From assembly GCA_002269645.1 (NCBI GenBank), contig NIVC01000636.1, forward strand, positions 271,646 through 335,645: DNA of 64,000 nt, written 5' to 3'. The position numbers and the translations under genes were made by a program. The notes below the pieces were generated by a model. The model had not been told where the DNA came from. It saw only the letters and a list, made by a program, of their open reading frames with translations, and did not search any database. Positions 25,407-50,500 of the stretch are shown here, piece after piece. Numbering within the stretch: position 1 is the stretch's first letter; each line of letters begins with the position of its first letter. This DNA is from Macrostomum lignano (lineage: Eukaryota).

Positions 25407-26321
25407 TCAGTTGCCCCTGACGGTGGCCAGCAGGCGGGCGGCGCACGGCCGGCTGCAGCCGATCACGTCGGCGGCCACGGGGTCGGCAGGCGCGTGTGCG
25501 GCCCGCACGGCGGCCAGCAGGGCGTCGGCCTGGCGGCCGCAGGTCACCGGCTCGGACTCGCGCAAGCAGAGGTCGGCGGCCACGGTGACGAAGGCGCGGT
25601 CGCAGGCGCCGGCTTCGATGCCGTAGTGGCCCGCGCAGGCGGCGCACAGGCGGTGGCTGTCACACAAGGCGGCCGCCTCAGCGTCCATTGCCAGGCCGAA
25701 GCGGCGCCGCACCTGGGCGCAGTTGGCCAGCGGCGTTCCGGCCGGAAAGCAGGCGCCGCCCTCGGCTTCGGCTGCCTCCTCGCCTTCGGCGTCGTGCCGA
25801 GCCAGCATCCCGGCCAGCCGGCGCAGGTCGCGGTCCCGAGCCGCGTTCTCCGCTGCCTGCGGCGGCGGCGCCACGGCGGCGGCCCGCTTCGGCGGAGACG
25901 CGTCGGGGGCCTCGGCGGCCTCGGTGACCTCCGCGGCGGCCTCGGCGGCGGCAGCTGCGGTGGCTGCCACGGAGCGCAGCTCGGCGTTCTCGGCACGCAG
26001 GCGTCGCAGCTCGTGGGCCTGGCGGCGGAGCTTCCGGACGGCGGTGCGGCCGGCCCGGACGGCCTCGGTCAGGGCTTCGTCCAGCTCCAGGCGTCGCCGC
26101 AGGCCACCGAGCGCAGCCTCGCCTGCCAGCTCGGCAGAGTTGGACGCCAACGCCAGCTGGCTGCCCTCGGCCCGACGGTCCAGCGCGAGGTCGCCAGCGT
26201 ACACACCGTCGTCGAAGTCGTCGTCGAAGTCGCCTTCCGCGTCGGAGATTCGGGCGAAGGCACTCAGCAGCAGCAGCAGCAGCAGCGGCAGCGGCCGCAG
26301 GCAGGTGTAGCGGACAGTCAT
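25407..26321 (-). CDS. Secreted protein (304 aa): signal peptide, acidic/coiled-coil pro-region, C-terminal conodipine-like (group IX-type) phospholipase A2 domain, probably catalytically impaired
   Basis: Intronless GC-rich non-repetitive ORF with ATG and stop. Leu-rich signal peptide. Cys pattern C-x2-H-[R]-x-C-x2-C...C-D-x2-F-x7-C...C...C-x3-C resembles the CxxHDxCYxC...CDxxF core of conodipine-type sPLA2, recognised from memory and not by search. Confidence 0.8.
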   Translation of the reverse strand: MTVRYTCLRPLPLLLLLLLSAFARISDAEGDFDDDFDDGVYAGDLALDRRAEGSQLALASNSAELAGEAALGGLRRRLELDEALTEAVRAGRTAVRKLRRQAHELRRLRAENAELRSVAATAAAAAEAAAEVTEAAEAPDASPPKRAAAVAPPPQAAENAARDRDLRRLAGMLARHDAEGEEAAEAEGGACFPAGTPLANCAQVRRRFGLAMDAEAAALCDSHRLCAACAGHYGIEAGACDRAFVTVAADLCLRESEPVTCGRQADALLAAVRAAHAPADPVAADVIGCSRPCAARLLATVRGN

Positions 26322-29084
26322 GTCTCTGCGCTCCGCTGTGTCAATCCGCTCCCCTTCTCGCCAAAAAGCGCCGCTCCAGTCTTTTAAGGCTTTCCCAGAC
26401 TTATCTGAGCTGCACCGGGGCGGGGTGGCGAGATGGCGCGGCGGGTGGCCGTTTGTTTATCCCCACTAGTCCTGTCCCCGCCTGCCCTCGGGCCTGGACC
26501 AATGACAGCCGGCTCGCGTACTGCGGCATGCGGACTGGCACCTGCTGTTTGACTGGGAAGGGGCGGCAGTTCCCCAGGGCTGAGCTGAGGGGAGCAGTTT
26601 GAGCGCTGGGAGAGAGATGAGGAGAGATGAGAGAGATGAGATGAGGATCTGCAGCTGGGAATGCGGAGGGGGCCAGGTCCCATCCCGACACTTACAGGCT
26701 TTTGTTTCCTCACGTGGGGACAGAAAACAGAAGGCAGACAGACAGAAACACTGCACTGCCGGCACTGAATACGGGGGGGGGGGGTACGGGCTGAGAATAA
26801 GGGAACTGCTCAGTCTCACAGGACCTCAGCTCCGACACGACGTATAATTAAGAGTATAATGCAAGACATGCGGGACTGCTGTGCTAATTTCTGCTGCAAT
26901 TTCTGAATTGATCTCCAGCCTCGCAGTTTTTCCCAGCTCTCGAAGCGCCCGCTGACGTCCCACCTCCGTCCCGGAGTGCAGCGGGGTACAGCGGCCCGGC
27001 GGTCAGTCTGGAGTCTGTACTCTGGCATTGGTTTGAGTCAGGTGTGCCAGAAAGCGGAAAACCCTCTGCCTGGGCCAAGATAGACTTTGAGAAGGGCTGG
27101 AATGATGAGGGCTAGGGGAAAGGAGACGCATGCTGACAGCAATATGCATCTTGCTCCATGGCCTGAGTTGCCATGGCAACCGTGACAGAATTGGCGAGGC
27201 GTAGAGGCACGAGCGCGAGCCTGGAAGAAGAGGGAGCGGAAAGAGGGGAGCTGAGCAAACCGAGCCAAACTTTGCAGTTTTGTCCCTGAGAGCATCGGCC
27301 TCGTTGCTGGGAGAGACGGGAGCGACTTGAGCTCAGCTTCAAGCTTTGTTGTCCATGAAAATTAGATGGATGTGCGGCAATTATTCATTTTTTCGAGCTC
27401 TCCTTTGAGCTCGCGGCACCGCCCTCCCAGCAATGTTTGCCTTTCCTCAACGACTCTTTGATGTCCGGGCCGATCGTGGCAATTTTCAGTCAAAAAAGCT
27501 GATCTCGAATGTACTTTAGTGGCCGCTGCCTTCCCAGATTTTTCCCGGGCATTAAGTCGGGGGATCTTGTGGGATTAGGAAAATTGCAGGCCGCATCGTA
27601 AAACTCTGCTGAGCTCGGATCGCCCCGGCGAGCCCATTGTGCAGCTATAATTGGATTCCGAGGGCCGCCGCTGCCGCTCGCTCCGCCGTCCCCGGCCGAA
27701 ATCTCGGCAATCGGATGGCGGCGCGGGGCACCGGGGAACTCTTTGAGGAAGCCGGCCTGTCCCGGCCAAGCTCTGAAACCCTGGGGATTTCAGTCAGTCT
27801 GCTTCCCCTTCCACTCTCTCTCGGTGCTAGTGAGCAGATTTGCCAGCCGCCTAAGGCATCAATTATTCCTCGTGTCCCTGTGTTATCCTCCTTCCTGAGA
27901 GCTGAGGGACCGGCTGCACTATTGCAGCCCCTCAGCCTCTCCAGCTCATGCCCGGCCTCATGTCTTGCATCCGCCGTTCTTGAGCCTCTCATTGTGAATT
28001 TTTAACGGACTTTCAAGCTCACGATTTCAGCCCATTCGCAAGTTCATGTGCGCAATCGGAGTCTGCGTCAATTATCACAGATCTGCAAATGTCTGGTCCA
28101 CGCTCTCTCCTGATGAGGAACAGAGCAACCGCAGCCCCACAATGCATGCAAGTTTTGACGCAGATGAGAAAGCAAGAGCTGGCTGTACTCTGTAAGTGGA
28201 GTGCGCCGACTCGATTGAGAATTTATCAATCAATTCATTTTTAACAGCATGAAAAAAAGCATTTGTCTGCCCACAGATGCCGTCTAGACAGCAACATGGG
28301 TCAGGACATACTCAGCAGAATTGGCAGGAGCAGCAGCCGAGCACTCAGCGCTACTCAGCGATTTGAGTAGCAATCAAAATCCGGCAGGGGCGCTCGGCAC
28401 TAGCTGCAGGGAATTCATCCCATTTTTAATCTCCAATCTGCCATGCAGCGCCCGCTAAGTGATGACGCATCAATGTCAAAATTTTTCAGCCTATAACAAG
28501 CTTCTATTATGAATCCAAAGAAGGTCGCGAGTTCGAGTACCACACTAGACTTGTCGAGAAATTGTATCCTACGCAGGGAATGTGTCCCAAGGCGGAAGTA
28601 TGCGGATGAGCAATTGCCATGGCAACCTCGGCATAAAGCCGTATTTAACAGTCAGATGAAATGACACACACAGGCCGCGCTGGGTGCCATGAAATATAAA
28701 TGCGCAGCGGGCTACTGCAGGCAGCCAGTTGAATAGGGGCAGGCGGGTATTGAGCCAAGCAGCGGCCAGGGCCAACTTGAAGCACCAATAAAATTGAGAA
28801 AAAAACTGTAGCCTGCGGCGTCGCTCCATCATCCTGCCGGAGTCGCCTGCCCAGGTGAGGGGATTGGGCCGTGATAAATTAAATTACAGCTCAGCGAGAG
28901 GTCTATGCGGGCTGGCAAGTACAGTTGGACACAATTAAGCAGGGCAAGTGCTCTACGCTGGTACGAGTATAGAGGCTGAATCGCGGATCATTGGATTTTA
29001 TGCGTTCATTTCTTCTACTTATAGTAACAAAGAAGCGCGAGAAATTCTTTTTTTAATCTTTGATAAATATCATCAATATTTACC

Positions 29085-30570
29085 CCCTCCCAAGTGACTT
29101 GATTCTCGTGAACTGGAACCCCAAGTGACTGGATTCTCGTGAACTGGAACCCCAAGTGACTGGATTCTCGTGAATTCGAACCCCCCAAGTGACTGGATTC
29201 TCGTGAATTCGAACCCCATTAAGTGACTGGATTCTCGTGAACTGGAAACCCCCCTCCCAAGTGACTGCATCCTCGTGAACTGGAACCCAAGTGACTGGAT
29301 TCTCGTGAACTGGAACCCAAGTGACTGCATTCTCGTGAACTGGAACCCCAAGTGACTGCATTCTCGTGAGCTGGAACCCCAAGTCCTGGATTCTCGTGAA
29401 CTGGAACCCCAAGTGACTGCATTCTCGTGAGCTGGAACCCCAAGTGACTGCATTCTCGTGAGCTGGAACCCCAAGTGTCTGGATTCTCGTGAACTGGAAC
29501 CCCAAGTGACTGGATTCTCGTGAATTCGAACCCCCCAAGTGACTGGATTCTCGTGAATTCGAACCCCCCAAGTGACTGGATTCTCGTGAACTGGAAACCC
29601 CCCCTCCCAAGTGACTGCATCCTCGTGAACTGGAACCCAAGTGACTGGATTCTCGTGAACTGGAACCCAAGTGACTGCATTCTCGTGAACTGGAACCCCA
29701 AGTGACTGCATTCTCGTGAGCTGGAACCCCAAGTCCTGGATTCTCGTGAACTGGAACCCCAAGTGACTGCATTCTCGTGAGCTGGAACCCCAAGTGACTG
29801 CATTCTCGTGAGCTGGAACCCCAAGTGACTGCATTCTCGTGAGCTGGAACCCCAAGTGACTGCATTCTCGTGAGCTGGAACCCCAAGTGACTGCTGACTG
29901 GATTCTCGTGAGCTGGAACCCCAAGTGACTGCATTCTCGTGACCTGGAACCCCAAGTGACTGCATTCTCGTGAGCTGGAACCCCAAGTGACTGCTGACTG
30001 GATTCTCGTGAGCTGGAACCCCAAGTGACTGCATTCTCGTGAGCTGGAACCCCAAGTGACTGCATTCTCGTGAGCTGGAACCCCAAGTGACTGCATTCTC
30101 GTGAGCTGGAACCCCAAGTCCTGGATTCTCGTGAACTGGAACCCCAAGTGACTGCATTCTCGTGAACTGGAACCCCAAGTGACTGCATTCTCGTGAGCTG
30201 GAACCCCAAGTCCTGGATTCTCGTGAACTGGAACCCCAAGTGACTGGACTCTCGTGAGCTGGAACCCCAAGTGACTGCATTCTCGTGAACTGGAATCCCA
30301 AGTGACTGCATTCTCGTGAGCTGGAACCCCAAGTCCTGGATTCTCGTGAGCTGGAACCCCAAGTGACTGCATTCTCGTGAGCTGGAACCCCAAATGACTG
30401 CATTCTCGTGAGCTGGAACCCCAAGTGACTGCATTCTCGTGAACTGGAACCCCAAGTGTCTGGATTCTCGTGAGCTGGAACCCCAAATGACTGGATTCTC
30501 GTGAGCTGGAACCCCAAATGACTGGATTCTCGTGAGCTGGAACCCCAAGTGTCTGGATTCTCGTGAACTG
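29085..30570. repeat. 31-bp minisatellite (CCAAGTGACTGCATTCTCGTGAGCTGGAACC) with a higher-order internal duplication
   Basis: Direct observation; rare variants (AATTCGAACCCCC, GGAAACCCCCTCCC) recur ~350 bp apart. Confidence 0.93.
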
Positions 30571-32259: not shown

Positions 32260-32793
32260 TCATCCCTTGGCCTGTGCGGCCAGCCACTCCAGGCCGGCCG
32301 TGAGGCCCTCGCCGCTCAGGGCGCAGCAGGCCTGAATGTGCCAGGGGTTGGCCCGGATGCTGGTGAGGTCCAGCGCCTGGCTGATCTCGGCCGCGGACAG
32401 CCGGCCGTTGATGTCCTGCTTGTTGGCGAGCACGAGCAGCCGCGCCCGCTTCAGGTGGTCCGAGGCGAGCATCTTGTACAGCTCGTCCTTGATGACGGCC
32501 AGCCGCTGCCTGTCGGAGGAGTCGATGACGAGGATGATGAAGTCGGTGCTCTGGTAGTAGGTCTCCCACGTGGCCCGGATGGAGGTCTGGCCGCCCAGGT
32601 CCCACATCACGAAGTGGATGTTGCGCCAGCGCAGCTGCTCCACGTTGGAGCCGATGGTAGGCGAGGTGTGCACGGCCTCGCCCAGCACCAGCTGGTACAG
32701 CACGGTGGTCTTGCCGGCATTGTCCAGCCCGACCAGCAGTACTTTGTGCTCTTGGGTACCAAAAAGGCTCCACAGCCTGGCTATTATCAGCCC
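32260..32793 (-). CDS. ARL5: ADP-ribosylation factor-like GTPase 5; exon starts at Gly2 and the initiator ATG is not adjacent in the genome
   Basis: [31 protein letters not shown] and [13 protein letters not shown] match ARL5A/B. Acceptor TTGCAG| at 32799-32794 is followed by GGG CTG ATA. In-frame TAA at 32820-32818 with no ATG in between. Confidence 0.95.
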
Positions 32794-35195
32794 CTGCAAG
32801 TTGGCGAGTGCCGTGATTTACTGATAGGCTTCAACTGAACTCGAATTAACAACCAGGTAGGATCCTGGGATTGGGATCCTACTTGACCCTTATTCAATAC
32901 AAGGCTGGATGAGACAAGGAATTAGGCAGGCAGTCAAGATGGAATTGAAAGTTTCATGCTTGCATATCGAACTATTTGACAACAGGGAATAATCTGGTCT
33001 GTTCTTGCCACATTCTCTCAAACAAACCACATGCTAAGAGTTCACCTTCGACCTGCTGAATCATCTTGGGACCAGTCTGGTTCAGTATAAGCTGTGGTCC
33101 ATTTCTCTTCTACTCCCTTGGGTGTGGGATGAGAGATGCTAATGCCAGACCTGGGGAGTTGCAGCTCTCTACAAAAGTACATGTTTTTTGTTATATGGAT
33201 ATATAAGCTTGTAGACAGGACATACAAATACATATATGGCTTTGGGAATGCATATTGCCTATATCTAATTAGTAATATTTGCCAATCAACAACAGAATTA
33301 ATTTAGACTTATTAAAAGATCATTGGAGCCCTTGATTTAATTGGTAAGAAGGGGGGGGGGGTAAAACAGAAGAAATAAATTAATTTTGCCCATTTCAAAG
33401 CTTTTGTAAAGCAGAGGGAACTATCAAATTCTTAGGTTAGGGACTCAAGCAATAGAGATCTTCTAAGCAATTGAGGCTAAAGTTGAGATAAATTCAATCC
33501 TAGCCATTCTTATAATATTAATAAATAATAATTTACAATATTACACTTGCCTTAATGGCCAGATGTGCAACCAACAGCTTAGCTATAGCTATTATGCAAT
33601 TATGAAAAGTTATAGGAAATTAATTAGCTATAGATATAAACATAAGTAAAGAATAAGAAAATGTATAAACTGCTATAGATATAGATACAAGAAAGTTTTT
33701 GTTATGGTTGAGCTCTTGCTTGTTGGATAAGTTCACAATATATAAAATTTTATTTTTGACAAAAAATCTAATATATAGTATTGTATATTAAAAATAATTA
33801 TTAACAATATATTATTACCTATAACTTTAAAGCTATCATCTATTGGAATAAAAAATATTTTAGGACATAAAGGAATCTTAATAGCCAAAGTTAGTGATAT
33901 AATTATTGAATGAAATAAGAAAATCATGCTAAAAAATAGAAAAAAGAAAGAACTCATGATGAACTTATGAAAAGAAAGAGAAAAGATTGTCTATAAATGA
34001 AAGATTGAAAAAATATACATTAAAAGACCTTTCTTTTGCTGATTTGTTTTTTTCATATACTAAAAATGGTTTATCAATAGTGAATAGGTATCTATGCATA
34101 CATGCCCAACCTCAAAATTTCACCTGTCCGATGCAACTTAGTTTTATCTAGATTAGTTAGTTCCTCCTAATTGCAACTTAGTTCTTCTTGATTGCAACTC
34201 AGTTACCCCAATTGCAACTTAATTTTCAATTTGTATGATTTTCCTTGCCTTTTTTCTTTTCTTCTTTTTCTCTTTTCTTTTCTCTCTCTCCTCTCTCCTT
34301 TCTTTTCTTTTTCTCTTTCTCTCCTTCATTCTTTTCCCAATTTTTTCAATTTTCGCTTTTTTGATTTTGCAACTTACCTTGGCTAATGTTCCCAAAGATG
34401 TTCCCAAATCAGTACATGTATTTTTATTAAGCTCTAGCTCATTGCTAATAAATGGATGAAATATTATGCTAGCTAAGACATCAGAAATTATGCTTTTTTA
34501 TAGTTGATATAGCCCATAATAGTAATAATTTTATACTTTTCTACTATGCTAGGCCTAGGGCTAAAAAAGGTCTACATTTTATTTTACTAATTAGCAGATA
34601 ATCAATGTTTAATAGGTTTTAAAATTGTTAGACCTTTAACTTAAATAAGATAAATAGCATAGTAACTAAGTAAGCTGTAGTAGTAGGTAGGCTGTAGTAG
34701 GCCAGTGCAGGCAAAAATAGGCCCACCTAATAGTAATAGAATGGATATTGGATAAGATAAAATTGAATGGTTTAAATTGAACCAACAAAAGTTAAGAGTA
34801 AGACAAAGTGCTGACAAGCAAAAAGAAATATACAGAATAGAGAGTACTCGTATATATATACTAACGTAACCCACTTTTATAGCAGGAACTAAACTAAAAA
34901 GACTAACACTAGTCGCCTACCTTGACTGAGATTAAATTAAGCAAATAAAGACCAACCCTACCTCCTATACATAGTGATGGTGTGACGTACTTGCCTATAT
35001 TTGGAAGATTATTCGGCCTATTTTTTAGCACTTATTATCACACTTAAAATTATTTTGAGATTTACTGAAACAATTAAACTCAAATAGTTAAATTCGTTGA
35101 AATACCATATTGAGTTTCTTTACTTTTGTTTTTTTACACTATTCTGCCATTTTAATTTTAGATTTTACACGAAACAAACGTGAACAATAATGCCA

Positions 35196-35613
35196 GTAAA
35201 GTGTAAAAAGTTACACACCCAGTTTTTTTGGGGAAAACGTTACCTTCAAATTGCGTTCAAAGAGCACAATGAAATTGAAAATAATATTGTATTTTGATTT
35301 CGTTTGTCTAGTTCAAATTAAAATTGCAAGTTAGAAGCTTATAGAATGGGTAAAATAAATCACAAGAGCATTTTTATTTTTTCATTGGGTAAGCGTGTGT
35401 AAACCCTGGGTAATTTCAGGTACGTTTTTGGGGTAATGTCTTACCCAGCAATTAAACACTCATTTATTGGCCTCATCATCTATATTTTATGAATAATTAT
35501 TCTATGATTTATGCTGCATAGGCGATAGCAAGTTATTTTCAATTTCATTGCGCTCTTTGAATGCAATTTGAAGGTAACGTTTTCGGGTAACTGGGTAACT
35601 TTTTACACTTTAC
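35196..35613. mobile_element. Foldback/MITE-like element with ~85-bp inverted arms
   Basis: 35196-35284 (GTAAAGTGTAAAAAG...AAAACGTTACCTTCAAATTGCGTTCAAAGAGCACAATGAAATTGAAAATAA) is the near reverse complement of 35533-35613. No clear target-site duplication. Confidence 0.6.
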
Positions 35614-35829
35614 CATAAAGCTTGAACTGCAGAGCAAACATCTGCAGATAGCAAGCATCCCCAGATATTGTTGAAGCATCCACCCAGATAGCAAGCATCT
35701 TCCGAGATAGCAAGCATCCCCCAGATATTGTTGAAGCATCTACCCAGATATAAAAAATCCTGCAGATAGCAAGAATCCCTAAATTGCAAGCATCCCTGGA
35801 TAGAAAGAATCCGATACATGTAGCCTAGC

Positions 35830-36140
35830 TTATCAAGTGCAATAATCCTTTGTTTGCCAATGCAGTTAATCCTTGGTTTATCAAGCGCAGTAATCCTTGG
35901 TTATCAAGTGCAGAAATCCTTGGTTTATTAAGTGCAGTAATCCTTGGTTTATCAAGTGCAGTAATCCATGGTTTATCAAGTGCAGAAATCCTTGGTTTAT
36001 CAAGTGTAGTAATCTTTGGTTTATCAAGTGCAATAATCCTTGGTTTATCAAGTGCAGTAATCCTTGGTTTATCAAGTGCAGTAATCCTTGGTTTATCAAA
36101 TGCAGTAATCCTTGATATATCAAGTGCAGTAATCCTTGGT
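35830..36140. repeat. 24-bp minisatellite (ATCAAGTGCAGTAATCCTTGGTTT)
   Basis: Direct observation. Confidence 0.88.
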
Positions 36141-36191
36141 TTATTAAGTGAATGAAAAGAAAATTTCACTACTTTTATATACTTTATATAC

Positions 36192-36258
36192 ACTACTAAG
36201 ATTTGAACCTAGGTCGCTGCATTAGTAGTCCAGTATGTTCAGCTCTAGGCTAGCTCTC
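36192..36258 (-). pseudogene. Degenerate tRNA-like sequence (pseudogene or SINE head)
   Basis: Minus strand TAGCCTAGAGCTGAA...CTGGA CTACTAA TGCAG CGAC CTAGG TTCAAAT CTTAG gives an A-box, anticodon arm and T arm with mismatches; the acceptor stem does not pair. Confidence 0.45.
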
Positions 36259-38310
36259 ATTGAAGTTAAATGAATTTGTAGCTCATATAAATCAACACTC
36301 ACACAAAGTCAGGTAGAGTAAAAGTCACATGAAGCAGTTATGATATAATTAATTTCTTAGGCAGTCAGTATCAGTGTCTATACTAACAATATGGTTAGGC
36401 AATATAAATCAAGTACTGTGCTATGCTTCTACACTCAACACTAATGCAATTCAACTAGTATACAGACAATAAATAAAAAGCCTATTGTGATGCAATCTAT
36501 TTCAGAATCAGAATTCAACCAGTCAGTTTTTTTCTTAGCATTCTTATGATGCATTTAAAGTTGAAAGAGCTGCTTGACCTTTGCAAAAAGCATGTTTTTC
36601 AAATATTTAATCCCTTTAGCATCAAGCAATTTCTTAGCAACATTGCAAGTACTGTCATGGAAAAATTTCTGATTGAACAGTGCATGTTCAAAGAAAATTG
36701 GCTTAGCCATTTTTGCTAAAACTGATCACATACTTACCTAGATAGATAGATACCTACCAACAGACCATTTTTAGTATATAGAAAATGTTATTCTTAAAAA
36801 AGTGGCAATTTTTTTCTAGTTCTTTTAATTAAAGCATGTTTAAAGCATTATATGGCATTTTTTTGTTTTACAATACTTGCACTTTGTGTCAATTTTGTTA
36901 TATAATACCCATTGGAAATTAGTGAGAATTGAAATAGATGTAGCTTTGATTGCAAAAATGTTTCAATCATAGCTTGCTAGCACACAATCCTTATATTCAC
37001 TTTCATTATACAATGCCCTTAATGGAGAATTTGTTAAGAATGCATTGTAAAATGAAAGTGAGGAGGTATAGAAGCAAAAATAAGGGAGAATATTAAGAAT
37101 TGGATATAGCCATGAAGAATCTTACAATTTTAGCTTATTAGTGCACAATCCTTATATTCACTTTCATTATAGGCCTACGATGCCCTCAATAGAGAATTTG
37201 TTAAGAATACATTGTAAAATGAAAGTGAGGGGGATATAGCAAATAAATGAAAGACTGAAAAGAAATGGGTATGACTGTTAACAAATTATCCCTTATTTTC
37301 ATTTTTATCCCCCTCACTTTTGTTTTAGAATGCATTCTTAATAAAGTCTTATATATTGGTCTATCTATCAAATTGCAGCCATTTGTTGTCTTGGTATCTA
37401 TTTTCTTAATTAACTAGTATTTCTAAAGCTGCTAAAAATTATCATTGATTTTAAATGAGTGACCAATAGTACAAAATTATATTTACACTACTATAAAAGT
37501 ACAACATAATATTGGTTAAAATTATTTCTATACATACTTCTGAAGAGTCAGAATCAACATTTGAAAATTGACCTTCCATTTTTTGCAAATTGCAAGTGTA
37601 GTGTCCTGATATATTGCTAATCCTTGTTTTGTAAAAGGTTTTGTTTATTCACTCAAATTTTGGATGCAATAATAAAAATATTATGTTGCATCTTTATTTG
37701 AAGAATAACAGCATTGTTTATCTATAGACCAACACATTTTTTTGTTTTTTTTCTACAAAGACATTTAATCACTCTTTAATTGGTGGTTCCTTAAAATTAG
37801 AAAGGATAGGTAGTAGATAATGGATAATGGATAATAGTAAAAGATGGCCGGTAGAGGGGGGGTTGCTACTTTAGATATATTAGATAGGTAAGTACTAGAT
37901 AACACTGTATATTAGTAGCAATTTTAGTGTATATAAGTCACACTTTGGAAGATTTTAAAAGATTAGAAGATTGTATTTTGTCATTTGAACTAGAAATGAT
38001 CAAATAGATTTACATCATGGCTATATTGATATATTGCCATGATAAAACTGGTTTCTTTATATACTTTAGTCAAATTTAATAATAGTAAGAGGCTGCCAAA
38101 GCCACTTTTCAATTCTAAGCAGATCTATAAAAGTATAAGGGATTATGTTATTTAACCTGACAATAATTTAGAGAAATTAGTCTAGTTGTACATATGCAGT
38201 TGGTTACTAGGCCCATTTGCCCATGGGTTAAATATGAGATTTGTCTATTTGTTTTAACTAAAGACAAAGTTATTAACTAATATAGTCATTTGTGGCTATC
38301 GCGCCTGCAG

Positions 38311-40266
38311 CACCGCCTGTGGTGCACTGGCTTAGTGCGCCATCTCTGGCGGCGTCGCAGGCGGCAGGCAGCCATTGTGGCCGCTGCCGTCACCGCCCTG
38401 CTGGCGCTCCTGCTGCTGGCCAGCGCCTCGCTCAGAAGGCCGCTGCCGCCGCCCTTCCAGCTGGAATCCGCCAGCACCATCGAATCCGTTGACCTGTTCG
38501 ACTCTCGCCGCGATGTCATCGTGCTGCTGCACATGCAGAAGACCGGCGGCTCGCACCTCAACCGCCAGCTCGTCTCCGGCTTGCGCCGACCCGACATGCG
38601 CTGCCAGTGCGGCCTCGGCGGCCTCGGCGGTGCGCGCCGGCGGAAATGGCGCTGCAGCTGCCGCAACAGCCGCGGCGACCTGTGGATTGTGAGCCGCTAC
38701 AGCACCGGCTGGCTCTGCGGCCTCCACGCCGACTTCGCCGCGCTGTCTGCCTGCGTGCCCGGCCAGCTGGCCGCGCTCGACTCCGACTTTGAGAGGCCGC
38801 GCCGCCTCCGCTACGTCACCATGCTGCGCCGGCCGGCCGACCGCTTCCTGTCCGAGTGGCAGCACGCGCGCCGCGGCGCCACCTGGCGGAAATCGCAGCC
38901 CACCTGCCGCGGCCGCCGGCCTCCGCCCTGCCGGACTGGCGACGGCGCCTGGCGCGGCGTCTCCCTGGCCGAGTTCGCCGCCTGCCGCGCCAACCCGGCG
39001 CTGAACCGGCAGGCGCGCATGCTGGCCAACGCCAGCGGCCTGCCCTGCCGGGCCGTCTTCGCCAACGGGAATCGAACCGCGGACCTACTGCTGGCCAGTG
39101 CGCTTCACAATCTGGTAGGGATGGCGGCGTTCGGCCTGACAGAGTGGCAGGTGAGCGAGCTGCTGGGAAGCTGGGACTTTTATGGAGTTGAGTATCTGGG
39201 ATATCTGATGGTGTTGAGGATCTGGGATATCTGATGGAGTTGAGGATCTGGGATATCTGGTGGTGTTGAGGATCTGGGATATCTGATGGAGTTGAGGATC
39301 TGGGATATCTGATGGAGTTGAGGATCTGGGATATCTGATGGAGTTGAGGATCTGGGATATCTGATGGAGTTGAGTATCTGGGATATCTGATGGAGTTGAG
39401 GATCTGGGATATCTGATGGAGTTGAGTATCTGGGATATCTGATGGAGTTGAGGATCTGGGATATCTGATGGAGTTGAGGATCTGGGATATCTGATGGTGT
39501 TGAGGATCTGGGATATCTGATGGTGTTGAGGATCTGGGATATCTGATGGAGTTGAGGATCTGGGATATCTGATGGTGTTGAGGATCTGGGATATCTGATG
39601 GAGTTGAGGATCTGGGATATCTGATGGTGTTGAGGATCTGGGATATCTGATGGGGTTGAGGATCTGGGATATCTGAATCTGATGGAGTTGAGGATCTGGG
39701 ATATCTGATGGAGTTGAGGATTTGGGATACTGAGGGAGCTGTAAAGACTCTTCAAGCGGATTTGCTGTTGTCACGCGGATGTCACTCCACCAAGCACCAC
39801 TCTCGGACCCGCGCAGATCCTGACGCAATACCTGCTGAGCAGGCGCCTCGGCCTGAGCTTCAGCCGCCTGTTCTGGCAGCAGGACGCCACCGTCGCCTCT
39901 AATTGGCGCGCCAGCGGCAACTTCAGCCTCGTCGCCGACGCCGGCGACCTCCAGCAGAGGCGACTGGCGGAGCTCGCCAACCCCGCCGACGCCCGCCTGT
40001 ACGCAGCGGCCGAGCGGCTGTTTTTCGGCCAGGCCCGCCGCCTGCTGGCTCGGGAGCCGCTGCTGTCGGCCGGCCAGCGGGCTCGAGTCCGGGACGCCGA
40101 CTCCGCAATCGGCGGCGACGCACTGACCGCGCTGGCCCGCCGGGTGCTGCTGGAGCTGGGCGCCGTTGAAGTGGACGACGCCGAGAAGGCAGACATCCGG
40201 CGCCGGGTGCGCAAGAAGCTCCTGCGGGCTGGCAACGACGAGGCCGAGTCGGATTCGAACTCGTGA
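38311..40266 (+). CDS. HS6ST: Heparan sulfate 6-O-sulfotransferase, 2 coding exons; initiator ATG not adjacent in the genome
   Basis: Exon 38311-39150 (TM anchor, LHMQKTGG 5'-PSB motif, WIVSRYSTGWLCGLHAD, YVTMLRRPADRFLSEWQHARRGATW, FGLTEWQ|GTGAGC) joins exon 39817-40266 (GCGCAG|ILTQYLL..., stop TGA). Begins at acceptor CCTGCAG|CAC. In-frame TAA at 38278. Confidence 0.93.
39185..39730. repeat. 26-bp minisatellite in the HS6ST intron (TGGGATATCTGATGGAGTTGAGGATC)
   Basis: Direct observation. Confidence 0.93.
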
Positions 40267-44530: not shown

Positions 44531-47500
44531 CTAACTGTAATCAATGTAGCCCTTCTCTCGCCCTGTCGGCGACGCCGTGGTCGGCGGCTGCTTCTCCTTC
44601 GGCTTGCGGATCAGCAGGCCGTTGCGGTCGGTCCTGGGGATGATGCCACCCCGGTGGGCGTGGGGCCGCGGTGCCTCCCGGCTCACCGTGCGGTACACGG
44701 CGTGGAAGCCCTTAAAGCTGATCGTGTCGTCGCTGCGGAACCGGATGTGCAGACTCTGCCTGGAGGAGTAGATCGGCCCGTCCGGACCCTGGGGCGCGGG
44801 ATGAAGGGCAATATTTCATGGTGAATTAATTACATTTCGGCAGATTTTATTAAAGAAACACAAATCCTCCAGGATCTCCTGTGGAAATCCCTACTGGGGA
44901 ACACCTTGCAGGTAATCCCTACAGGGGAACACCTTGCGGGAATCCGTACTGGGGAACACCTTGCAGGTAATCCCTACTGGGGAACACCTTGCGGGAATCC
45001 GTACTGGGGAACACCTTGCGGGGGAACCTTGCGGGGGAATCCGTAGTGGGGAACACCTTGCGGGAATCCGTAGTGGGGAACACCTTGCGGGAATCCGTAC
45101 TGGGGAACACCTTGCGGGAATCCGTACTGGGTAACATCTTGCAGGGGAATTCGTATTGGGGAACACCTTGCGAGGAATCCATAGTGGGGAACACCTGACG
45201 GCAGTACGGATTACAGGTGGATACCTTGTAAATCCTCTGCAATGAAGTTTTTGCGAGTCCCCACTGGGATTAATCTCTTTATGGATATTTCGAGAAACCT
45301 TACTGAGAAATAACTACCGATATATGGAATTATCCTTTACCGGAGAAAAACTTTCTTTTTGGTAATAAAAAAGCATGGATTTGGGAATCCATGCAGGGAC
45401 TAACTACCCCGTTTGCTAAAGCTCAATTTAGCGGAAACAGAGTTCGAACCCCAGACGCTGACGCACCTTCCTCTCCCGCAGGTTGCCGCAGTAGCGGCCC
45501 AGCAACACACCTCTGTCGTTGTCGTCATCGAAGATGTCCACGTAGTCGTAGCTGCGGGTTGGCCGGAGCGGCGGGGAAGGTAGTGAGTTCCCCCAATCCC
45601 AATCTGGGAAAAAACTTCCACGCGTTCGGAATCAGAACGCGGCCAACTCACCCGCACTCGATTTCGCTCTCCAGCTCAAATGTCTCCATGTTGAGCACGA
45701 TCACCTCCTCGGGATTGGAGGTGGTGAGGGTCCAGTTGCAATTCTCCCTGGTCCCGTAGTCCTTGTCCCCGAAGCCGGCGTGGCTGTAGAAGCTCGCGTT
45801 CGCGGACGAGGCGATCAGCTGCCCACCGCAGACTGTTGAGTGACAGGTGTGGGGGGAGGCCCTGACTTTCTAATCGGGGTCAGGCAATCGCCTGTACACT
45901 GTTAGAACACTACTTCAGGCTACTGTTAGAACACTACTTCGCCTGAACACTACTTATAGTAGTTTATCAATTCGCGCTCCTCACTGGACGAGTGATCCGC
46001 ATTGAAGCCCTTCCGCTGCAGCGAGGAGTCGCTGACGAAGCCCACAAACATCGAGTTGCCGGTGCTGATCACCGGAGTCGGCGGCATCGCGTCGCCGCAG
46101 AAGACTCCGATTCGCTCCGAGGTGGCATCGGGACCGTCGCGGATCTCCACGTGGTCGTAGGCGCAGTCTGGATGGCGCTCGATTTCAAAGTGCTTGAACA
46201 CCTGGGGTGGGAGGAGGGGATCTCGAAGTGCTTGAACACCTGAGGAGAGGGAGGAGACTTTGACTTGACTTAGCTGCAGGGCTGTCCCGGAGGGGACACA
46301 GCGGGAAGGCGCGGGCGCCCATTCCGCTAGTCCCTGAACGGCCGAGAGGGAGGAGGGGATCTCGAAGTGCTTGAACACCTGGGGGTGGGAGGAGGGGATC
46401 TCGAAGTGCTTGAACACCTGAGGAGAGGGAGGAGGGGATCTCGAAGTGCTTGAACACCTGAGGAGAGGGAGGAGGGGATCTCGAAGTGCTTGAACACCTG
46501 GGGGTGAGAGGAGGGGATCTCGAAGTGCTTGAACACCTGAGGAGAGGGAGGAGGGGATCTCGAAGTGCTTGAACACCTGGGGATGAGAGGAGGGGATCTT
46601 GAAGTGCTTGAACACCTGGGGATGAGAGGAGGGGATCTTGAAGTGCTTGAACACCTGGGGATGAGAGGAGGGGATCTCGAAGTGCTTAAACACCTTGGGG
46701 TGGGAGGAGGGGATCTCGAAGTGCTTGAACACCTGGGGGTGGGAGGAGGGGATCTTGAAGTGCTTGAACACCTGAGGAGAGGGAGGAGGGGATCTCGAAG
46801 TGCTTGAACACCTGAGGAGAGGGAGGAGGGGATCTCGAAGTGCTTGAACACCTGGGGAGAGGGAGGAGGGGATCTCGAAGTGCTTGAACACCTGAGGAGA
46901 GTTAGGAGGGGATCTTGAAGTGCTTGAACACCTGAGGAGAGGGAGGAGGGGATCTCGAAGTGCTTGAACACCTTGGGGTGGGAGGAGGGGATCTCGAAGT
47001 GCTTGAACACCTGAGGAGAGGGAGGAGGGGATCTCGAAGTGCTTGAACACCTGGGGGTGGGAGGAGGGGATCTCGAAGTGCTTGAACACCTGAGGAGAGG
47101 GAGGAGGGGATCTCGAAGTGCTTGAACACCTGAGGAGAGGGAGGAGGGGATCTCGAAGTGCTTAAACACCTGGGGGTGGGAGGAGGGGATCTCGAAGTGC
47201 TTAAACACCTGGGGGTGGGAGGAGGGGATCTCGAAGTGCTTAAACACCTGGGGGTGGGAGGAGGGGATCTCGAAGTGCTTAAACACCTGGGGGTGGGAGG
47301 AGGGGATCTCGAAGTGCTTAAACACCTGGGGGTGGGAGGAGAGGATCTCGAAGGACTTGTAACTGCGATCCCCAGCTCCCTACTCAGAGTAGCCAAGCTC
47401 TGCTCATACCAGTTTGATGCGGTGCCCCGGCGTGGTGCGGAAGTTCCAGCTGCACCGCTTTTCCAGCGGGTACCTGCGGGGATAGTTGGGGCTGGAGAAC

Positions 47501-50500
47501 TCGCCGCTCAGCCGGGTGATTCGGTGCTTGCAGCCGCCCTCCTTGCACTGGTGGTTGCCGTACAGCACGTAGCCGCTGTGGCAGGCGCACACGTAGGAGC
47601 CGATGGTGTTCTTGCACAGCTGGTCGCAGCCGCCGTTCATCATGGCGCACTCGTCCCGGTCCACCATGAAGCTGGCCGAGAACCCGCCCTTAGACACCTG
47701 CGGGGCGGGGACGGGTCCACGGGTGAATGGGGCGGGTAGAGTGGGTGCGGAGGAGTGGGGAGAGCGGCGGATGGAGAGGGAAGAGGGGCGGATGCTGTAG
47801 CGAGAGGGGCGGATGGAGAAGGGGGCGGATGGAGTGAAGACAGGGGCGGATGCAGTGGGGAGATGGGCGGGTGCAGTGGGGAGAGGGAGGTAGAGGGGGT
47901 GGAATGCAGTCGGTTGAAGTAGTTGATAAGGGAAAAGTTGAGCACTAATCAAGCATAAACACAAGAACAATTCAGATAAACACATGAATATTTTAGATAA
48001 ACACAAGAGCATGTGTTTATATGCGGGTGCAGAGAATAAACGCAAGCATCTTCGCGAGCTCACAGTGCCGTCAGAGATGAAGCTGATCTTCATCGTATTA
48101 TTCTCCGAGGTGATGGACTCGGGAGGCTGGTCGCCGCAGTATCTGCCGATTCGTTTCGAGGTGGCCTCGTCGACACCGTCGAAGATGTCCAGGTAGTCGT
48201 ATTCGCACCTCTGCGGGCCGGCAATGGATTAATGAGAGCAGGTGCGTCACGTGACCGGAGCTCGGTGCCCGGGCAGGGGATGAGATTAATGAGAGCAGGT
48301 GCGTCACGTGACCGGAGCTCGGTGCCCGGGCAGGGGATGAGATTAATGAGAGCAGGTGCGTCACGTGACCGGAGCTCGGTGCCCAGGCAGGGGATGAGAT
48401 TAATGAGAGCAGGTGCGTCACGTGACCGGAGCTCGGTGCCCAGGCAGGGGATGAGATTAATGAGAGCAGGTGCGTCACGTGACCGGAGCTCGGTGCCCAG
48501 GCAGGGGATGAGATTAATGAGAGCAGGTGCGTCACGTGACCGGAGCTCGGTGGCCTGGCCAAACTCACATCGCGTCCTTCGATATCAAAGGCGGTGAAAT
48601 TGAGCAGAATCTTGTGCCCGATGGGGGCGATAATGTGCCACTTGCAGTGCTTGTTGGGCGGGTACTTGTCCGGGTAAGAGGGCGATGTGACGGTGCCCCG
48701 CATGGCCACCAGGGTGCCTCCGCAGGTGTCTTCGCAGGTGCGACCGTCTCGGTGCAGGTGGAAGCCGGGCCGGCAGTCGCAGTGGTAGCCGCCCAGCGTG
48801 TTCACGCAGATGTGCTGGCAGCCGTGCTGCTGCCCGCCGTGCAGCGCCATGCACTCATCGTACTCTGGGTGGGTAGGTTTGGTAGGTAGTGTAGGGTGTT
48901 TTGGGTAGGGTGAATTGGGTAGGGTGAATTGGGTAGGGTGAATTGGGTAGGGTGAATTGGGTAGGGTGAATTGGGTAGGGTGAATTGGGTAGGGTGAATT
49001 GGGTAGGGTGAATTGGGTAGGGTGAATTGGGTAGGGTGAATTGGGTAGGGTGAATTGGATAGGGTGAATTGGGTAGGGTGAATTGGGTAGGGTGAATTGG
49101 GTAGAGAGACTCGGGTAAGGTGGGCTGAATATTGGTATGCTCACAATCATGGATTAAGCAGGGTTCGAACCCGGCCAGCTCACCCTTCTCGAAGGTGGCC
49201 GCAAAGCCAATCTTGTTGACGGAGTTGTCCGACTTGAACCGCACCGTCATCCGGTTGCCGGTGCTCTTCACCGGCTTCGGGACCGTCTCGCCGCAGAACT
49301 TGCCCAGCGATACGCCGTCCTGCGACCAGCCCTCCAGCACCTCAACGAAGTCATACACGCACTGGGTGTGCGTCTCCAGCTGCGGGTGGGTCGATGAACT
49401 GCAGACCTGACCTGATCTCATCTTACCTTGACCCAATCTGACCTGACCTGACCTGACCTGACCTGACCCGACCTGACCTGACCCGACCTGACCCTGACAT
49501 GACCTGATCTGATCTGATCTGATCTGACCTGACCTGACCTGACCTGACCTGATCTGACCTGACCTGACTCAGAGGTTTATTAATCAGTGGTTAAATCGGG
49601 GTTCAGGCATGGAATTTTGGCTTGAGGCTCGTGCAATTCACCCTGCTAATAGGAGGAAGCAGGACGTCCCCATGCCCCATCCTCCCCCAGACTCACCTCA
49701 AAAGAGAAGAACTTGAGCGCCACTGAGTAGCCGTTGGGAACCTCAATCTTCCAAATGCACTCCTTGTCACCGCGGTAGGCGCTGGGGTAGTTGGGGCTGG
49801 AGATCTGGCCCTCGTCACTGATTCGATAGCCGCCGCAGATGGCTGCTCGCGTTAAAATGAAAATGGATCGATTGATTTCTGATTGGCAAATCAGAATTCT
49901 GCCTGCAACCTTCGCCTCAAATGGAAAGATATGAGCACCTACGAACTTTTTAAGCACAGCCTTTTTTGAGAGGACAGCAAAGAGATACCGCATCTTGTGA
50001 CAATGTTTGCCGATTGCAATTCAAAATGAGTTGATTGTAACTGATAATGGCAGATTGCAATGATACACTGGCAGATTGCAATGATACACTGTCAGATTGC
50101 AATGATACACTAGCAGATTGCAATGATACACTGGCAGATTGCAATGATACACTGTCAGATTGCAATGATACACTAGCAGATTGCAATGATACACTGTCAG
50201 ATTGCAATGATACACTGGCAGATTGCAATGATACATTGTCAGATTGCAATGATACACTGGCAGATTGCAATGATACATTGTCAGATTGCAATGATACACT
50301 GGCAGATTGCAATGATACACTGGCAGATTGCAATGATACATTGTCAGATTGCAATGATACACTGGCAGATTGCAATGATACACTGGCAGATTGCAATGAT
50401 ACACTGTCAGATTGCAATGATACACTGTCAAATTGCAATGATACACTGGCAGATTGCAATGATACATTGTCAGATTGCAATGATACACTGGCAGATTGCA

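What the first reader, a model, noticed from the sequence alone, without database searches (positions are those of the whole stretch)
32794..38310. Head-to-head pair of ATG-less genes sharing a 5.5-kb AT-rich spacer: candidate bidirectional promoter with two outrons
Seen: ARL5 (-) and HS6ST (+) diverge from a sharply AT-rich island unlike the GC-rich, minisatellite-laden surroundings, and both start with a phase-0 acceptor. Inference: this is one bidirectional unit producing two outron-bearing pre-mRNAs that both need the SL AUG. Both products are Golgi-associated (established for ARL5 and HS6ST), which hints at co-regulation. Two independent phase-0 ATG-less starts facing away from one spacer are the strongest sign of an unusual expression system in this window.
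Basis: inference. Interest (0 to 1): 0.72.

Follow-up and report, generated by a model that had tools for sequence, protein, structure and literature searches.

The report
Divergent flatworm genes borrowing leader AUG
Two neighbouring, oppositely oriented genes of the flatworm Macrostomum lignano (ARL5 and HS6ST) lack a start codon and almost certainly take it from the AUG that ends the trans-spliced leader, which is already known in flatworms; the AT-rich DNA between them looks like ordinary transposon-bearing intergenic sequence, and nothing shows that it is one two-way promoter.

Summary
ARL5 (-) begins at Gly2 (32793) directly after cTTGCAG. HS6ST (+) begins at 38311 directly after cCTGCAG. 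Neither has an in-frame ATG before essential residues. The 5,517 bp between them has GC 0.315, against 0.53 for the rest of the window.

The window is Macrostomum lignano assembly GCA_002269645.1. Its published spliced leader (SL) ends in ATG, and the published trans-acceptor motif [T/C]TNCAG fits both sites. An RNA contig from a related species carries the SL tail joined exactly at the orthologous HS6ST acceptor, with the SL ATG in frame. A 70%-identical ARL5 paralogue also starts at Gly2 after TTTCAG. Dependence on the SL AUG is therefore well supported, but it has been known in flatworms since 2006.

The "single bidirectional unit / co-regulation" inference is not supported:
- AT-rich 4-6 kb upstream regions occur at every other M. 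lignano locus I fetched.
- The spacer contains a MITE and other repeats.
- The ARL5-HS6ST pairing is absent at both paralogous loci and in two other flatworms.
- 5.5 kb is far wider than known bidirectional promoters.
- TSS positions cannot be tested here.

Verdict: real, ordinary, low interest.

The parts
32260..32793 (-). ARL5 (ARL5B-like) complete CDS minus the Met codon. Single exon, 177 codons from Gly2, stop at 32260-32262, GC3 0.92.
   Evidence: Pfam Arf 1.3e-64. Aligns to residues 2-176 of human ARL5. The annotated protein P0001 is 177 aa with no Met.
32794..32800 (-). ARL5 trans-splice acceptor cTTGCAG, read on the minus strand. It fits [T/C]TNCAG. The exon starts in phase 0.
   Evidence: Motif from PMC8629364.
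32818..32820 (-). In-frame TAA upstream of the ARL5 acceptor. No ATG lies between it and the exon.
32794..38310 (.). AT-rich intergenic spacer, 5,517 bp, GC 0.315. It must contain the promoter(s) and both outrons. No coding capacity or known RNA family was found.
32800..33199 (.). Zone of intermediate GC (0.42-0.46) next to ARL5. It includes a 9-bp-stem palindrome GTAGGATCC...GGATCCTAC near 32858-32885.
   Evidence: Function unknown.
34097..34432 (.). MITE copy. It has a perfect 14-bp terminal repeat CATACATGCCCAAC at 34097-34110 and a degenerate far end. Internally it has 21-bp repeats and a CT/AG-rich run.
   Evidence: The same family sits at L003/L007 8632-9093 with perfect TIRs and an 8-bp TSD TTCCTTCT. 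The site is empty in L008.
35204..35613 (.). Palindromic MITE-like element. The core arms are 35233-35284 and 35533-35584, 52 nt each and 96% complementary.
35642..36150 (.). Tandem arrays: 19/60-bp units at 35642-35812 and a 24-bp minisatellite x13.4 at 35830-36150.
36954..37349 (.). Direct and inverted repeat cluster forming a hairpin. It gives only sub-threshold hits to plant miRNA families.
38278..38280 (+). In-frame TAA upstream of the HS6ST acceptor. No ATG lies between it and the exon.
38304..38310 (+). HS6ST trans-splice acceptor cCTGCAG. It fits [T/C]TNCAG.
   Evidence: The orthologous RNA contig L004 has the SL tail joined at exactly this point.
38311..39150 (+). HS6ST exon 1, 280 codons, phase 0. 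It encodes a basic cytoplasmic tail, a type-II membrane anchor, and the PAPS loop HMQKTGGS.
39151..39816 (+). HS6ST intron. It contains a 26-bp minisatellite at 39182-39738 whose copy number differs between assembly copies.
39817..40266 (+). HS6ST exon 2, 149 codons plus the stop codon.

Best explanation
The window is Macrostomum lignano DNA. ARL5 and HS6ST are two head-to-head genes, each the first or only gene of its transcription unit.

Each primary transcript starts somewhere in the AT-rich spacer. Its 5' part (the outron) is removed by spliced-leader trans-splicing at a YTNCAG acceptor that abuts codon 2. The 35-nt SL ends in AUG, so the splice itself creates the initiation codon in frame.

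For ARL5 this gives Met-Gly-Leu-Ile-Ile-Ala-Arg, the usual N-myristoylation start of ARL5. The genome therefore encodes the whole mature protein, and the SL supplies only the Met. For HS6ST it gives Met-His-Arg-Leu..., a basic tail ahead of the type-II signal anchor.

Shown: the anatomy, the SL sequence and motif (literature), SL joining at the orthologous HS6ST acceptor, and the same ATG-less start in a diverged ARL5 paralogue.

Inferred: SL joining at ARL5 in this species, translation from the SL AUG, and outron extent.

The spacer is ordinary M. lignano intergenic DNA, AT-rich and enlarged by MITE and tandem-repeat insertions. It most likely holds two separate promoters, one nearer each gene, rather than one shared bidirectional promoter.
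For: Source of the window.
- It is identical to GCA_002269645.1 contig NIVC01000636.1.
- The nearest named proteins are M. lignano BOX15_ entries flagged 'partial'.

SL system (PMC8629364).
- The M. lignano SL is CGGTCTCTTACTGCGAAGACTCAATTTATTGCATG.
- About 30% of genes are SL trans-spliced, and the acceptor motif is [T/C]TNCAG.
- Gene 5' boundaries in this assembly were cut at peaks of SL-containing reads (PMC5730564). The annotated CDSs start at 32793 and at 38311-38314.

HS6ST transcript evidence.
- Logan RNA contig L004 encodes an HS6ST orthologue with 75% aa identity.
- It begins CAATTTATTGCATG|CACCGCCTGCGG. These are the last 14 nt of the SL followed by the orthologue of window 38311 onward, with the ATG in frame.

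ARL5 comparative evidence.
- The paralogue family (70% aa identity) starts at Gly2 after TTTCAG in three copies, all without ATG.
- Taenia and Fasciola ARL5B have a genomic ATG.

No cis alternative.
- No in-frame ATG lies upstream.
- ATG|GT occurs only 3 times on the minus strand and 6 times on the plus strand of the spacer, and none has the GT[A/G]AG consensus.

The genes are functional.
- ARL5 shows 4 of 4 synonymous differences between copies.
- GC3 is 0.86-0.92.

SL AUG as initiator is an established mechanism: Cheng et al. 2006, cited in PMC9851317 and PMC12582326.

The spacer is ordinary.
- AT-rich upstream regions: L003 4001-10000 has GC 0.29-0.41. The L005 spacer has GC 0.24-0.38. L007 is similar.
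- In four of five cloned functional M. lignano promoters, the ~400 nt of sequence held in the supplement has GC 0.33-0.39.
- A MITE with TIR, TSD and an empty site, plus palindromic and tandem repeats, lies inside the spacer.
Against: - No M. lignano transcript or SL read for either gene could be inspected here.
- For ARL5, no SL-bearing transcript from any species was found. The exact 178-aa Met-form is not in the protein collection.
- A 'partial' flag alone is weak evidence. The neighbouring 340-aa gene is flagged partial yet has its own ATG.
- The claim of two separate promoters is a prior drawn from spacing: C. elegans outrons have a median of 369 nt and a 90th percentile of 2.1 kb. It is not a measurement, and M. 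lignano outron lengths are unknown.
- The three assembly copies are about 99% identical, so they give no footprinting power.
Confidence: 0.75

Rival explanations
1. One bidirectional promoter in the spacer fires both ways and makes two long outrons that together span about 4.5-5.5 kb. The two Golgi-related genes are co-regulated.
For: - The genes are head-to-head with no annotated gene between them.
- Both are trans-spliced at their first codon, so both TSSs must lie in the spacer.
- Divergent outron TSS pairs exist in C. elegans, about 694 candidates (PMC3730108).
- MITE insertions could have stretched outrons that were once short.
Against: - The acceptors are 5.5 kb apart. Known bidirectional promoters have TSSs 60-160 bp apart (C. 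elegans) or, from general knowledge, less than 1 kb apart. This model would need both outrons at or beyond the C. elegans 90th percentile.
- The pairing is not retained at the ARL5 paralogue locus, where the upstream gene is on the same strand.
- It is not retained at the HS6ST paralogue locus, where the neighbour is a Ras/Ral-like GTPase.
- It is not retained near Taenia or Fasciola ARL5B.
- Even in C. elegans such pairs show almost no expression correlation, r < 0.066.
- Shared Golgi localisation is weak evidence by itself.
Confidence: 0.15
2. Both genes have conventional upstream first exons ending in ATG, hidden in the AT-rich spacer and cis-spliced to these acceptors. Missing annotation makes them look ATG-less.
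For: - A few ATG|GT sites exist in the spacer: minus strand at 36768, 35616 and 35108; plus strand at six sites.
- No M. lignano transcript data were available to me.
Against: - None of those sites has the GT[A/G]AG donor consensus, which is present at about 65% of M. lignano donors.
- The orthologous HS6ST mRNA carries the SL at this acceptor, not a cis exon.
- The ARL5 paralogue shows the same ATG-less acceptor start in a completely different upstream sequence.
- Annotation boundaries in this assembly derive from SL-read peaks.
Confidence: 0.05
3. The ATG-less starts reflect pseudogenes, non-AUG initiation, or an assembly chimera. In the chimera version the AT-rich block is foreign or mis-joined DNA.
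For: - The composition break at 38300 is very sharp.
- An in-frame TTG precedes each exon.
Against: - The same arrangement occurs on three separate contigs at 98.4-98.7% identity.
- The ORFs are intact, and ARL5 shows only synonymous differences between copies.
- Equally sharp GC steps occur at other M. lignano gene starts, for example L005 at 10001 with 0.38 -> 0.68.
- The TTG codons lie in the outron or acceptor. For ARL5, starting there would destroy the Met-Gly myristoylation start.
Confidence: 0.03

Closest known systems
[quoted passage not shown]
   Same: - The SL ends in AUG.
- The acceptor lies in phase directly before codon 2.
- The gene has no usable AUG of its own.
[quoted passage not shown]
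   Different: - The species differs: a free-living macrostomorph rather than a schistosome.
- Neither gene has been described as such a case in the papers I found.
- For ARL5 the SL supplies only a residue that is normally removed before Gly2 is myristoylated.
- That dependence is shared by two old paralogues.
SL trans-splicing and its annotation in Macrostomum lignano (Wudarski 2017, PMC5730564; Ustyantsev & Berezikov 2021, PMC8629364)
   Same: - Same assembly, SL sequence and acceptor motif.
- Both genes behave as SL-trans-spliced genes outside operons. The nearest same-strand genes are more than 5 kb away, against an operon cut-off of 1 kb.
   Different: Those papers do not discuss use of the SL AUG as a start codon, or divergent gene pairs (no mention of ATG or bidirectional).
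Bidirectional promoters with divergent outron TSSs in C. elegans (Saito et al. 2013, PMC3730108; also Chen 2013, Kruesi 2013)
   Same: Head-to-head trans-spliced genes whose TSSs are hidden because the outrons are discarded.
   Different: - In C. elegans the paired TSSs are 60-160 bp apart and the median outron is 369 nt.
- Here the acceptors are 5.5 kb apart and no TSS is known.
- The C. elegans SL does not supply the start codon.
MITEs (non-autonomous DNA transposons) with 8-bp target-site duplication, hAT/P-like
   Same: - 14-bp perfect terminal inverted repeats.
- An 8-bp TSD.
- 336-462 bp long with no ORF.
- Filled and empty sites among paralogous copies.
   Different: - The superfamily is not assigned, and no autonomous partner was seen.
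- It has internal 21-bp tandem repeats of variable number.
- The window copy has one degenerate end.

Membership tests
SL-AUG-dependent trans-spliced gene (flatworm type) | The organism has a spliced leader ending in AUG | tested here: met
   The window is the M. lignano assembly. The published SL ends in ...TTGCATG. No SL gene lies in the window.
SL-AUG-dependent trans-spliced gene (flatworm type) | A 3' splice acceptor of the trans-splice type lies directly at the start of the ORF, in phase 0 | tested here: met
   cTTGCAG|GGG for ARL5 and cCTGCAG|CAC for HS6ST. Both fit [T/C]TNCAG.
SL-AUG-dependent trans-spliced gene (flatworm type) | No in-frame genomic AUG that could give a functional protein | tested here: met
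   - An in-frame TAA lies 8-10 codons upstream of each acceptor, with no ATG between.
- The first downstream ATG removes the ARL5 P-loop, or the HS6ST membrane anchor and part of the PAPS loop.
SL-AUG-dependent trans-spliced gene (flatworm type) | mRNA carrying the SL joined at that acceptor | tested here: inconclusive
   - HS6ST: met in the orthologue of a related species. L004 begins with the SL tail followed by the exon, in frame.
- ARL5: no transcript found. There is only indirect support from annotation boundaries and the paralogue.
SL-AUG-dependent trans-spliced gene (flatworm type) | Translation actually starts at the SL AUG | not testable with these tools
   Needs ribosome profiling or N-terminal proteomics. 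Supporting detail: the 22 codons between the SL AUG and the first internal AUG of the orthologue are conserved as protein, with synonymous changes.
Bidirectional promoter | Divergent (head-to-head) orientation with no gene in between | tested here: met
Bidirectional promoter | The two TSSs lie close together (<1 kb; 60-160 bp in C. elegans) | not testable with these tools
   - No TSS data were available, and the acceptors are 5,517 bp apart.
- TATA-like words are scattered on both strands, 18 in the spacer, so they carry no information.
Bidirectional promoter | Conserved pairing or co-expression of the two genes | tested here: not met
   - Pairing is absent at the ARL5 paralogue locus and the HS6ST paralogue locus.
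- It is absent near Taenia and Fasciola ARL5B.
- Co-expression was not testable.
ARL5 (Arf-like GTPase 5) | Arf fold with full-length similarity to ARL5A/B and a Gly2 myristoylation start | tested here: met
   Pfam Arf 1.3e-64. Human ARL5B/5A match at 1e-77 and 6e-73 from residue 2. With the SL Met the N-terminus reads MGLIIAR, against human ARL5B MGLIFAK.
Heparan-sulfate 6-O-sulfotransferase | HS6ST catalytic domain with PAPS-binding loop and a type-II membrane anchor | tested here: met
   Match to 5t03 (zebrafish HS6ST3) at E 1.5e-54, with HMQKTGGS aligned to HIQKTGGT. Named HS6ST homologues at 37-46% identity. An RRRRR tail is followed by a 22-aa hydrophobic stretch.
MITE | Terminal inverted repeats, target-site duplication, no ORF, and a filled versus empty site | tested here: met
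   L003/L007 8632-9093 has TIR CATACATGCCCAAC/GTTGGGCATGTATG and TSD TTCCTTCT. L008 has the empty site. The window copy is 34097-~34432 with one intact TIR.

The most novel reading that the evidence does not exclude
The AT-rich spacer holds a single divergent promoter whose two multi-kilobase outrons tolerate transposon insertions. ARL5 and HS6ST would then be a co-regulated Golgi module in which both proteins depend obligately on SL trans-splicing for their start codon, so SL availability would gate both at once. This would be the first documented bidirectional outron promoter in a flatworm.
Probability: 0.12. Interest if true: 0.4.

Novelty: new member of a known kind. Interest (0 to 1): 0.2.

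Why it matters
This is a clean worked example of genes that cannot be translated without trans-splicing.

For ARL5, the genome encodes every residue of the mature protein, and the spliced leader provides only the initiator Met. That dependence is shared by two old paralogues but not by tapeworm or fluke orthologues.

The practical value lies in annotation. Proteins flagged '5'-partial' in M. lignano and other flatworm assemblies can be complete once the SL AUG is added. In the other direction, some 'partial' flags are artefacts.

It adds no new mechanism. The bidirectional-promoter idea would be of modest interest for designing flatworm transgenes, if existing RAMPAGE data confirmed it.

Tried and rejected
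1. Searched the window for the SL sequence or an SL RNA gene: none, allowing up to 3 mismatches.

2. Searched the spacer for known RNAs and coding capacity.
- Rfam gave only sub-threshold hits to plant miRNA families on hairpin repeats.
- No tRNA was found.
- Ten spacer ORFs had no Pfam match.

3. A 290-nt similarity lies 1.0-1.6 kb upstream of both ARL5 paralogues, in the same orientation. I first considered it a conserved promoter element. I rejected this because it is a MITE with TIRs, a TSD and an empty site in a third copy.

4. The neighbour of the HS6ST paralogue was listed with an Arf Pfam hit, which suggested a conserved ARL-HS6ST block. I rejected this because its first exon is Ras/Ral-like (GSGGVGKSALTLQF) and tblastn with ARL5 found nothing.

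5. I guessed that the 'g2' suffix in the locus tag meant the second gene of an operon. That was wrong: g1, g2 and so on number near-identical copies.

6. Footprinting between assembly copies had no power. Substitutions were 0.55% in the spacer and 0.75-0.83% in the exons, and the third copy is 98.4% identical.

7. Searches for an ARL5 transcript failed.
- The exact Met-form is not in the collection.
- No close Logan relative appeared.
- Supplement searches for the gene IDs were empty.
- The run accession SRR28338166 is not in the literature library, so the species of L004 is unnamed.

8. A TATA-word scan found 18 of 21 window matches in the spacer, on both strands. That reflects AT content and gives no position.

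9. I did not use the sigma-70 promoter and terminator scanner, because it does not apply to an animal genome.

10. I considered a retrocopy origin for the acceptor (TTGCAG versus the SL's TTGCATG). I dropped it because nothing further upstream matches the SL and the paralogue has TTTCAG.

Full report
**Where the window comes from.** The ARL5 protein encoded at the left edge of the finding is found on two contigs of assembly GCA_002269645.1. The window matches contig NIVC01000636.1 at 100% over 20.5 kb. The nearest named proteins are Macrostomum lignano BOX15_ entries. This is the Mlig_3_7 assembly of the DV1 line described in PMC5730564.

The ARL5-spacer-HS6ST block occurs three times in that assembly, on NIVC01000636, NIVC01000637 and NIVC01001494, at 98.4-98.7% identity. 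That fits the known duplication of the large chromosome in DV1.

**The observation.** It is correct to the base.
- The spacer 32794-38310 is 5,517 bp with GC 0.315, against 0.532 for the rest of the window. It is the only long AT-rich block in the window.
- The surroundings are GC-rich and 44.5% tandem repeat.

ARL5 lies on the minus strand as a single exon.
- Its first codon, GGG at 32791-32793, follows cTTGCAG directly.
- An in-frame TAA lies nine codons upstream, with no ATG between.
- The translation aligns from its first residue to Gly2 of human ARL5A/B, so exactly the Met codon is missing.

HS6ST lies on the plus strand.
- Exon 1 starts at 38311 after cCTGCAG, in phase 0.
- An in-frame TAA lies ten codons upstream, with no ATG between.
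- The gene has a second exon at 39817-40266. The intron between the exons carries a 26-bp minisatellite.
- Identity as HS6ST is firm: E 1.5e-54 to the zebrafish HS6ST3 crystal-structure sequence, and named homologues.

The first genomic in-frame ATGs would delete the ARL5 P-loop, or the HS6ST membrane anchor and part of its PAPS loop. Neither would give a working protein.

**What supplies the start codon.** M. lignano has a single 35-nt spliced leader, CGGTCTCTTACTGCGAAGACTCAATTTATTGCATG. It is attached to about 30% of genes at acceptors with the motif [T/C]TNCAG (PMC8629364). Both acceptors fit that motif.

The strongest evidence here is an RNA-seq contig from a related organism (Logan SRR28338166, locus L004). 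It encodes an HS6ST with 75% amino-acid identity. It begins CAATTTATTGCATG|CACCGCCTGCGGTGC. Those are the last 14 nt of the SL, followed immediately by the orthologue of window 38311 onward, with the SL ATG in frame. The 22 codons between that ATG and the orthologue's first internal ATG are conserved as protein (HRLRCVGLVRHLWRRRRQ against HRLWCTGLVRHLWRRRRRQ) and include synonymous changes.

For ARL5 I found no transcript, so the evidence is comparative.
- A second M. lignano ARL5 family (70% identity, three copies) also starts at Gly2 directly after TTTCAG. It has no ATG, and its upstream sequence is otherwise unrelated.
- The Taenia and Fasciola orthologues have introns and a genomic ATG.
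- With the SL Met, the N-terminus becomes MGLIIAR, close to human ARL5B MGLIFAK, which restores the Met-Gly myristoylation start.

The annotation of this assembly cut gene 5' ends at peaks of SL-containing reads. The annotated CDSs begin at these acceptors.

A cis alternative is disfavoured. The spacer has only 3 (minus strand) and 6 (plus strand) ATG|GT sites, and none has the GT[A/G]AG donor consensus.

One caution: the 'partial' flag alone proves nothing. The neighbouring 340-aa gene is flagged partial but has its own ATG and a signal peptide.

**Is this new?** No. The 3'-terminal AUG of flatworm spliced leaders acting as initiator methionine was shown in 2006. In Schistosoma it is in frame in 28% of trans-spliced mRNAs and is required by more than 40 cDNAs (Cheng et al. 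2006, as summarised in PMC9851317 and PMC12582326).

In a small sample of ten gene families in the M. lignano loci I fetched, three start at an acceptor without ATG. Two such genes side by side is therefore not remarkable.

**What the spacer is.** It has no ORF with a Pfam match, no tRNA, and no Rfam family above threshold. It does contain repeats:
- a MITE at 34097-~34432;
- a 410-bp palindromic element at 35204-35613, with 52-nt arms 96% complementary;
- tandem arrays at 35642-36150;
- a direct and inverted repeat cluster at 36954-37349.

The MITE deserves a note because it first looked like a conserved regulatory element. It lies 1.3-1.6 kb upstream of ARL5. A 77-79% identical copy lies 0.9-1.3 kb upstream of the ARL5 paralogue in the same orientation. 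In the paralogue locus it has perfect 14-bp terminal inverted repeats (CATACATGCCCAAC), is flanked by an 8-bp duplication (TTCCTTCT), and is absent from a third copy of that locus, which shows the empty site. It is therefore a mobile element, and the similarity in position is coincidence.

AT-richness is not special to this spacer.
- The 6 kb upstream of the ARL5 paralogue has GC 0.29-0.41.
- The 4.2-kb spacer upstream of the HS6ST paralogue has GC 0.24-0.38, with an equally sharp step to 0.68 at the gene start.
- In four of five cloned, functional M. lignano promoters, the ~400 nt of sequence held in the supplement has GC 0.33-0.39.

In this genome, GC-rich exons and minisatellites sit in AT-rich unique intergenic DNA.

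**One promoter or two?** This cannot be measured here. Several results lean against a single bidirectional unit.
- The acceptors are 5.5 kb apart. Bidirectional outron promoters in C. elegans have TSSs 60-160 bp apart. Outrons there have a median of 369 nt and a 90th percentile of 2.1 kb, and even those pairs are barely co-expressed.
- The ARL5-HS6ST pairing is not kept at the ARL5 paralogue locus, where the upstream neighbour is on the same strand.
- It is not kept at the HS6ST paralogue locus. There the divergent neighbour is a Ras/Ral-like GTPase with its own ATG, not an ARL.
- It is not kept near ARL5B in Taenia or Fasciola.
- The three assembly copies are too similar to reveal constrained blocks: 0.55% substitutions in the spacer against 0.75-0.83% in the exons.
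- TATA-like words are scattered over both strands.

I put a shared bidirectional promoter at roughly 0.12-0.15. Two separate promoters, each nearer its own gene, are the more likely arrangement. Both genes are first or only genes of their units: no same-strand gene lies within the 1-kb repeat-adjusted operon distance used for this species.

**Verdict.** That inference is now supported by an orthologous SL-bearing transcript for HS6ST and by paralogue comparison for ARL5. The mechanism is already established for flatworms. The locus lies in a published, SL-annotated genome, and the AT-rich "island" is ordinary transposon-bearing intergenic DNA. The bidirectional-promoter and co-regulation ideas remain untested and are weakly disfavoured. 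Existing RAMPAGE and SL-read data for M. lignano would settle both points quickly.

Noticed in passing
window 34097-34432; L003 and L007 8632-9093; empty site in L008 near 9100: A MITE family with a 14-bp perfect TIR CATACATGCCCAAC and an 8-bp TSD (TTCCTTCT). Internally it has 21-bp repeats (GGAGGAACTAAGTTGCAATTA) and an AG-rich run. Independent copies sit upstream of both ARL5 paralogues, and a filled versus empty polymorphism exists between paralogous copies.
   Followed up: yes
window 35204-35613: A 410-bp palindromic element with 52-nt core arms 96% complementary. It is probably a second MITE. No TSD or other copy was found in about 138 kb of M. lignano sequence.
   Followed up: partly
window 4128-4480 (+): An exon of a neuropeptide precursor with ten KRYMRFG[KR] units, predicting YMRFamide-type FMRFamide-like peptides. 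It coincides with a 117-bp-period tandem repeat.
   Followed up: partly
window 47407-48228 (-) and 52935-53342 (-): Exons with CUB plus calcium-binding EGF domains and an astacin protease domain. These are pieces of a tolloid/BMP1-like gene on the minus strand, interrupted by many minisatellites.
   Followed up: partly
window 11798-12547 (-): An ORF with an ammonium transporter/Rh family match (Pfam PF00909, E 1.2e-6).
   Followed up: no
window 25407-26429 (-): A 340-aa gene with no Pfam match, about 5.8 kb downstream of ARL5 on the same strand. It is annotated as 5'-partial but has its own ATG at 26321 followed by a signal-peptide-like LLLLLLL stretch. This shows that 'partial' flags in this annotation are not all SL-AUG cases.
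   Followed up: partly
whole window: 65 tandem-repeat arrays with periods of 4-218 bp cover 44.5% of the 64 kb. Copy numbers differ between the assembly copies, for example in the HS6ST intron array at 39182-39738 and the array at 29089-30570.
   Followed up: partly
L003/L007/L008 10001 (ARL5 paralogue); L009 and L010 (Taenia, Fasciola ARL5B): Both Macrostomum ARL5 families are intronless and lack an ATG. The tapeworm and fluke orthologues have introns (3.3 and 9.5 kb gene spans) and a genomic ATG. Taenia has a TTTCAG acceptor 27 nt upstream of its ATG.
   Followed up: partly
L005 5690-5787 (-) and 10001 (+): The HS6ST paralogue (46% identity, own ATG) is head-to-head with a Ras/Ral-like GTPase gene written in AT-rich codons. 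This contrasts with GC3 of about 0.9 in ARL5 and HS6ST, so M. lignano genes differ sharply in codon composition.
   Followed up: no
L010 9806-10001: In Fasciola hepatica, ARL5B lies only 195 bp head-to-head with another small-GTPase gene. That spacing is far more typical of a bidirectional promoter than the 5.5 kb seen here.
   Followed up: no
window 38311-38314 vs L001 and L006; L008 10001: In some assembly copies the annotated CDS starts one codon after the acceptor (428 aa against 429 aa for HS6ST; 176 aa against 177 aa for the ARL5 paralogue). The acceptor also shows a C/T difference at position -5 (cctgcag against cccgcag). This is probably a 1-2 nt offset in the read-defined 5' ends.
   Followed up: no
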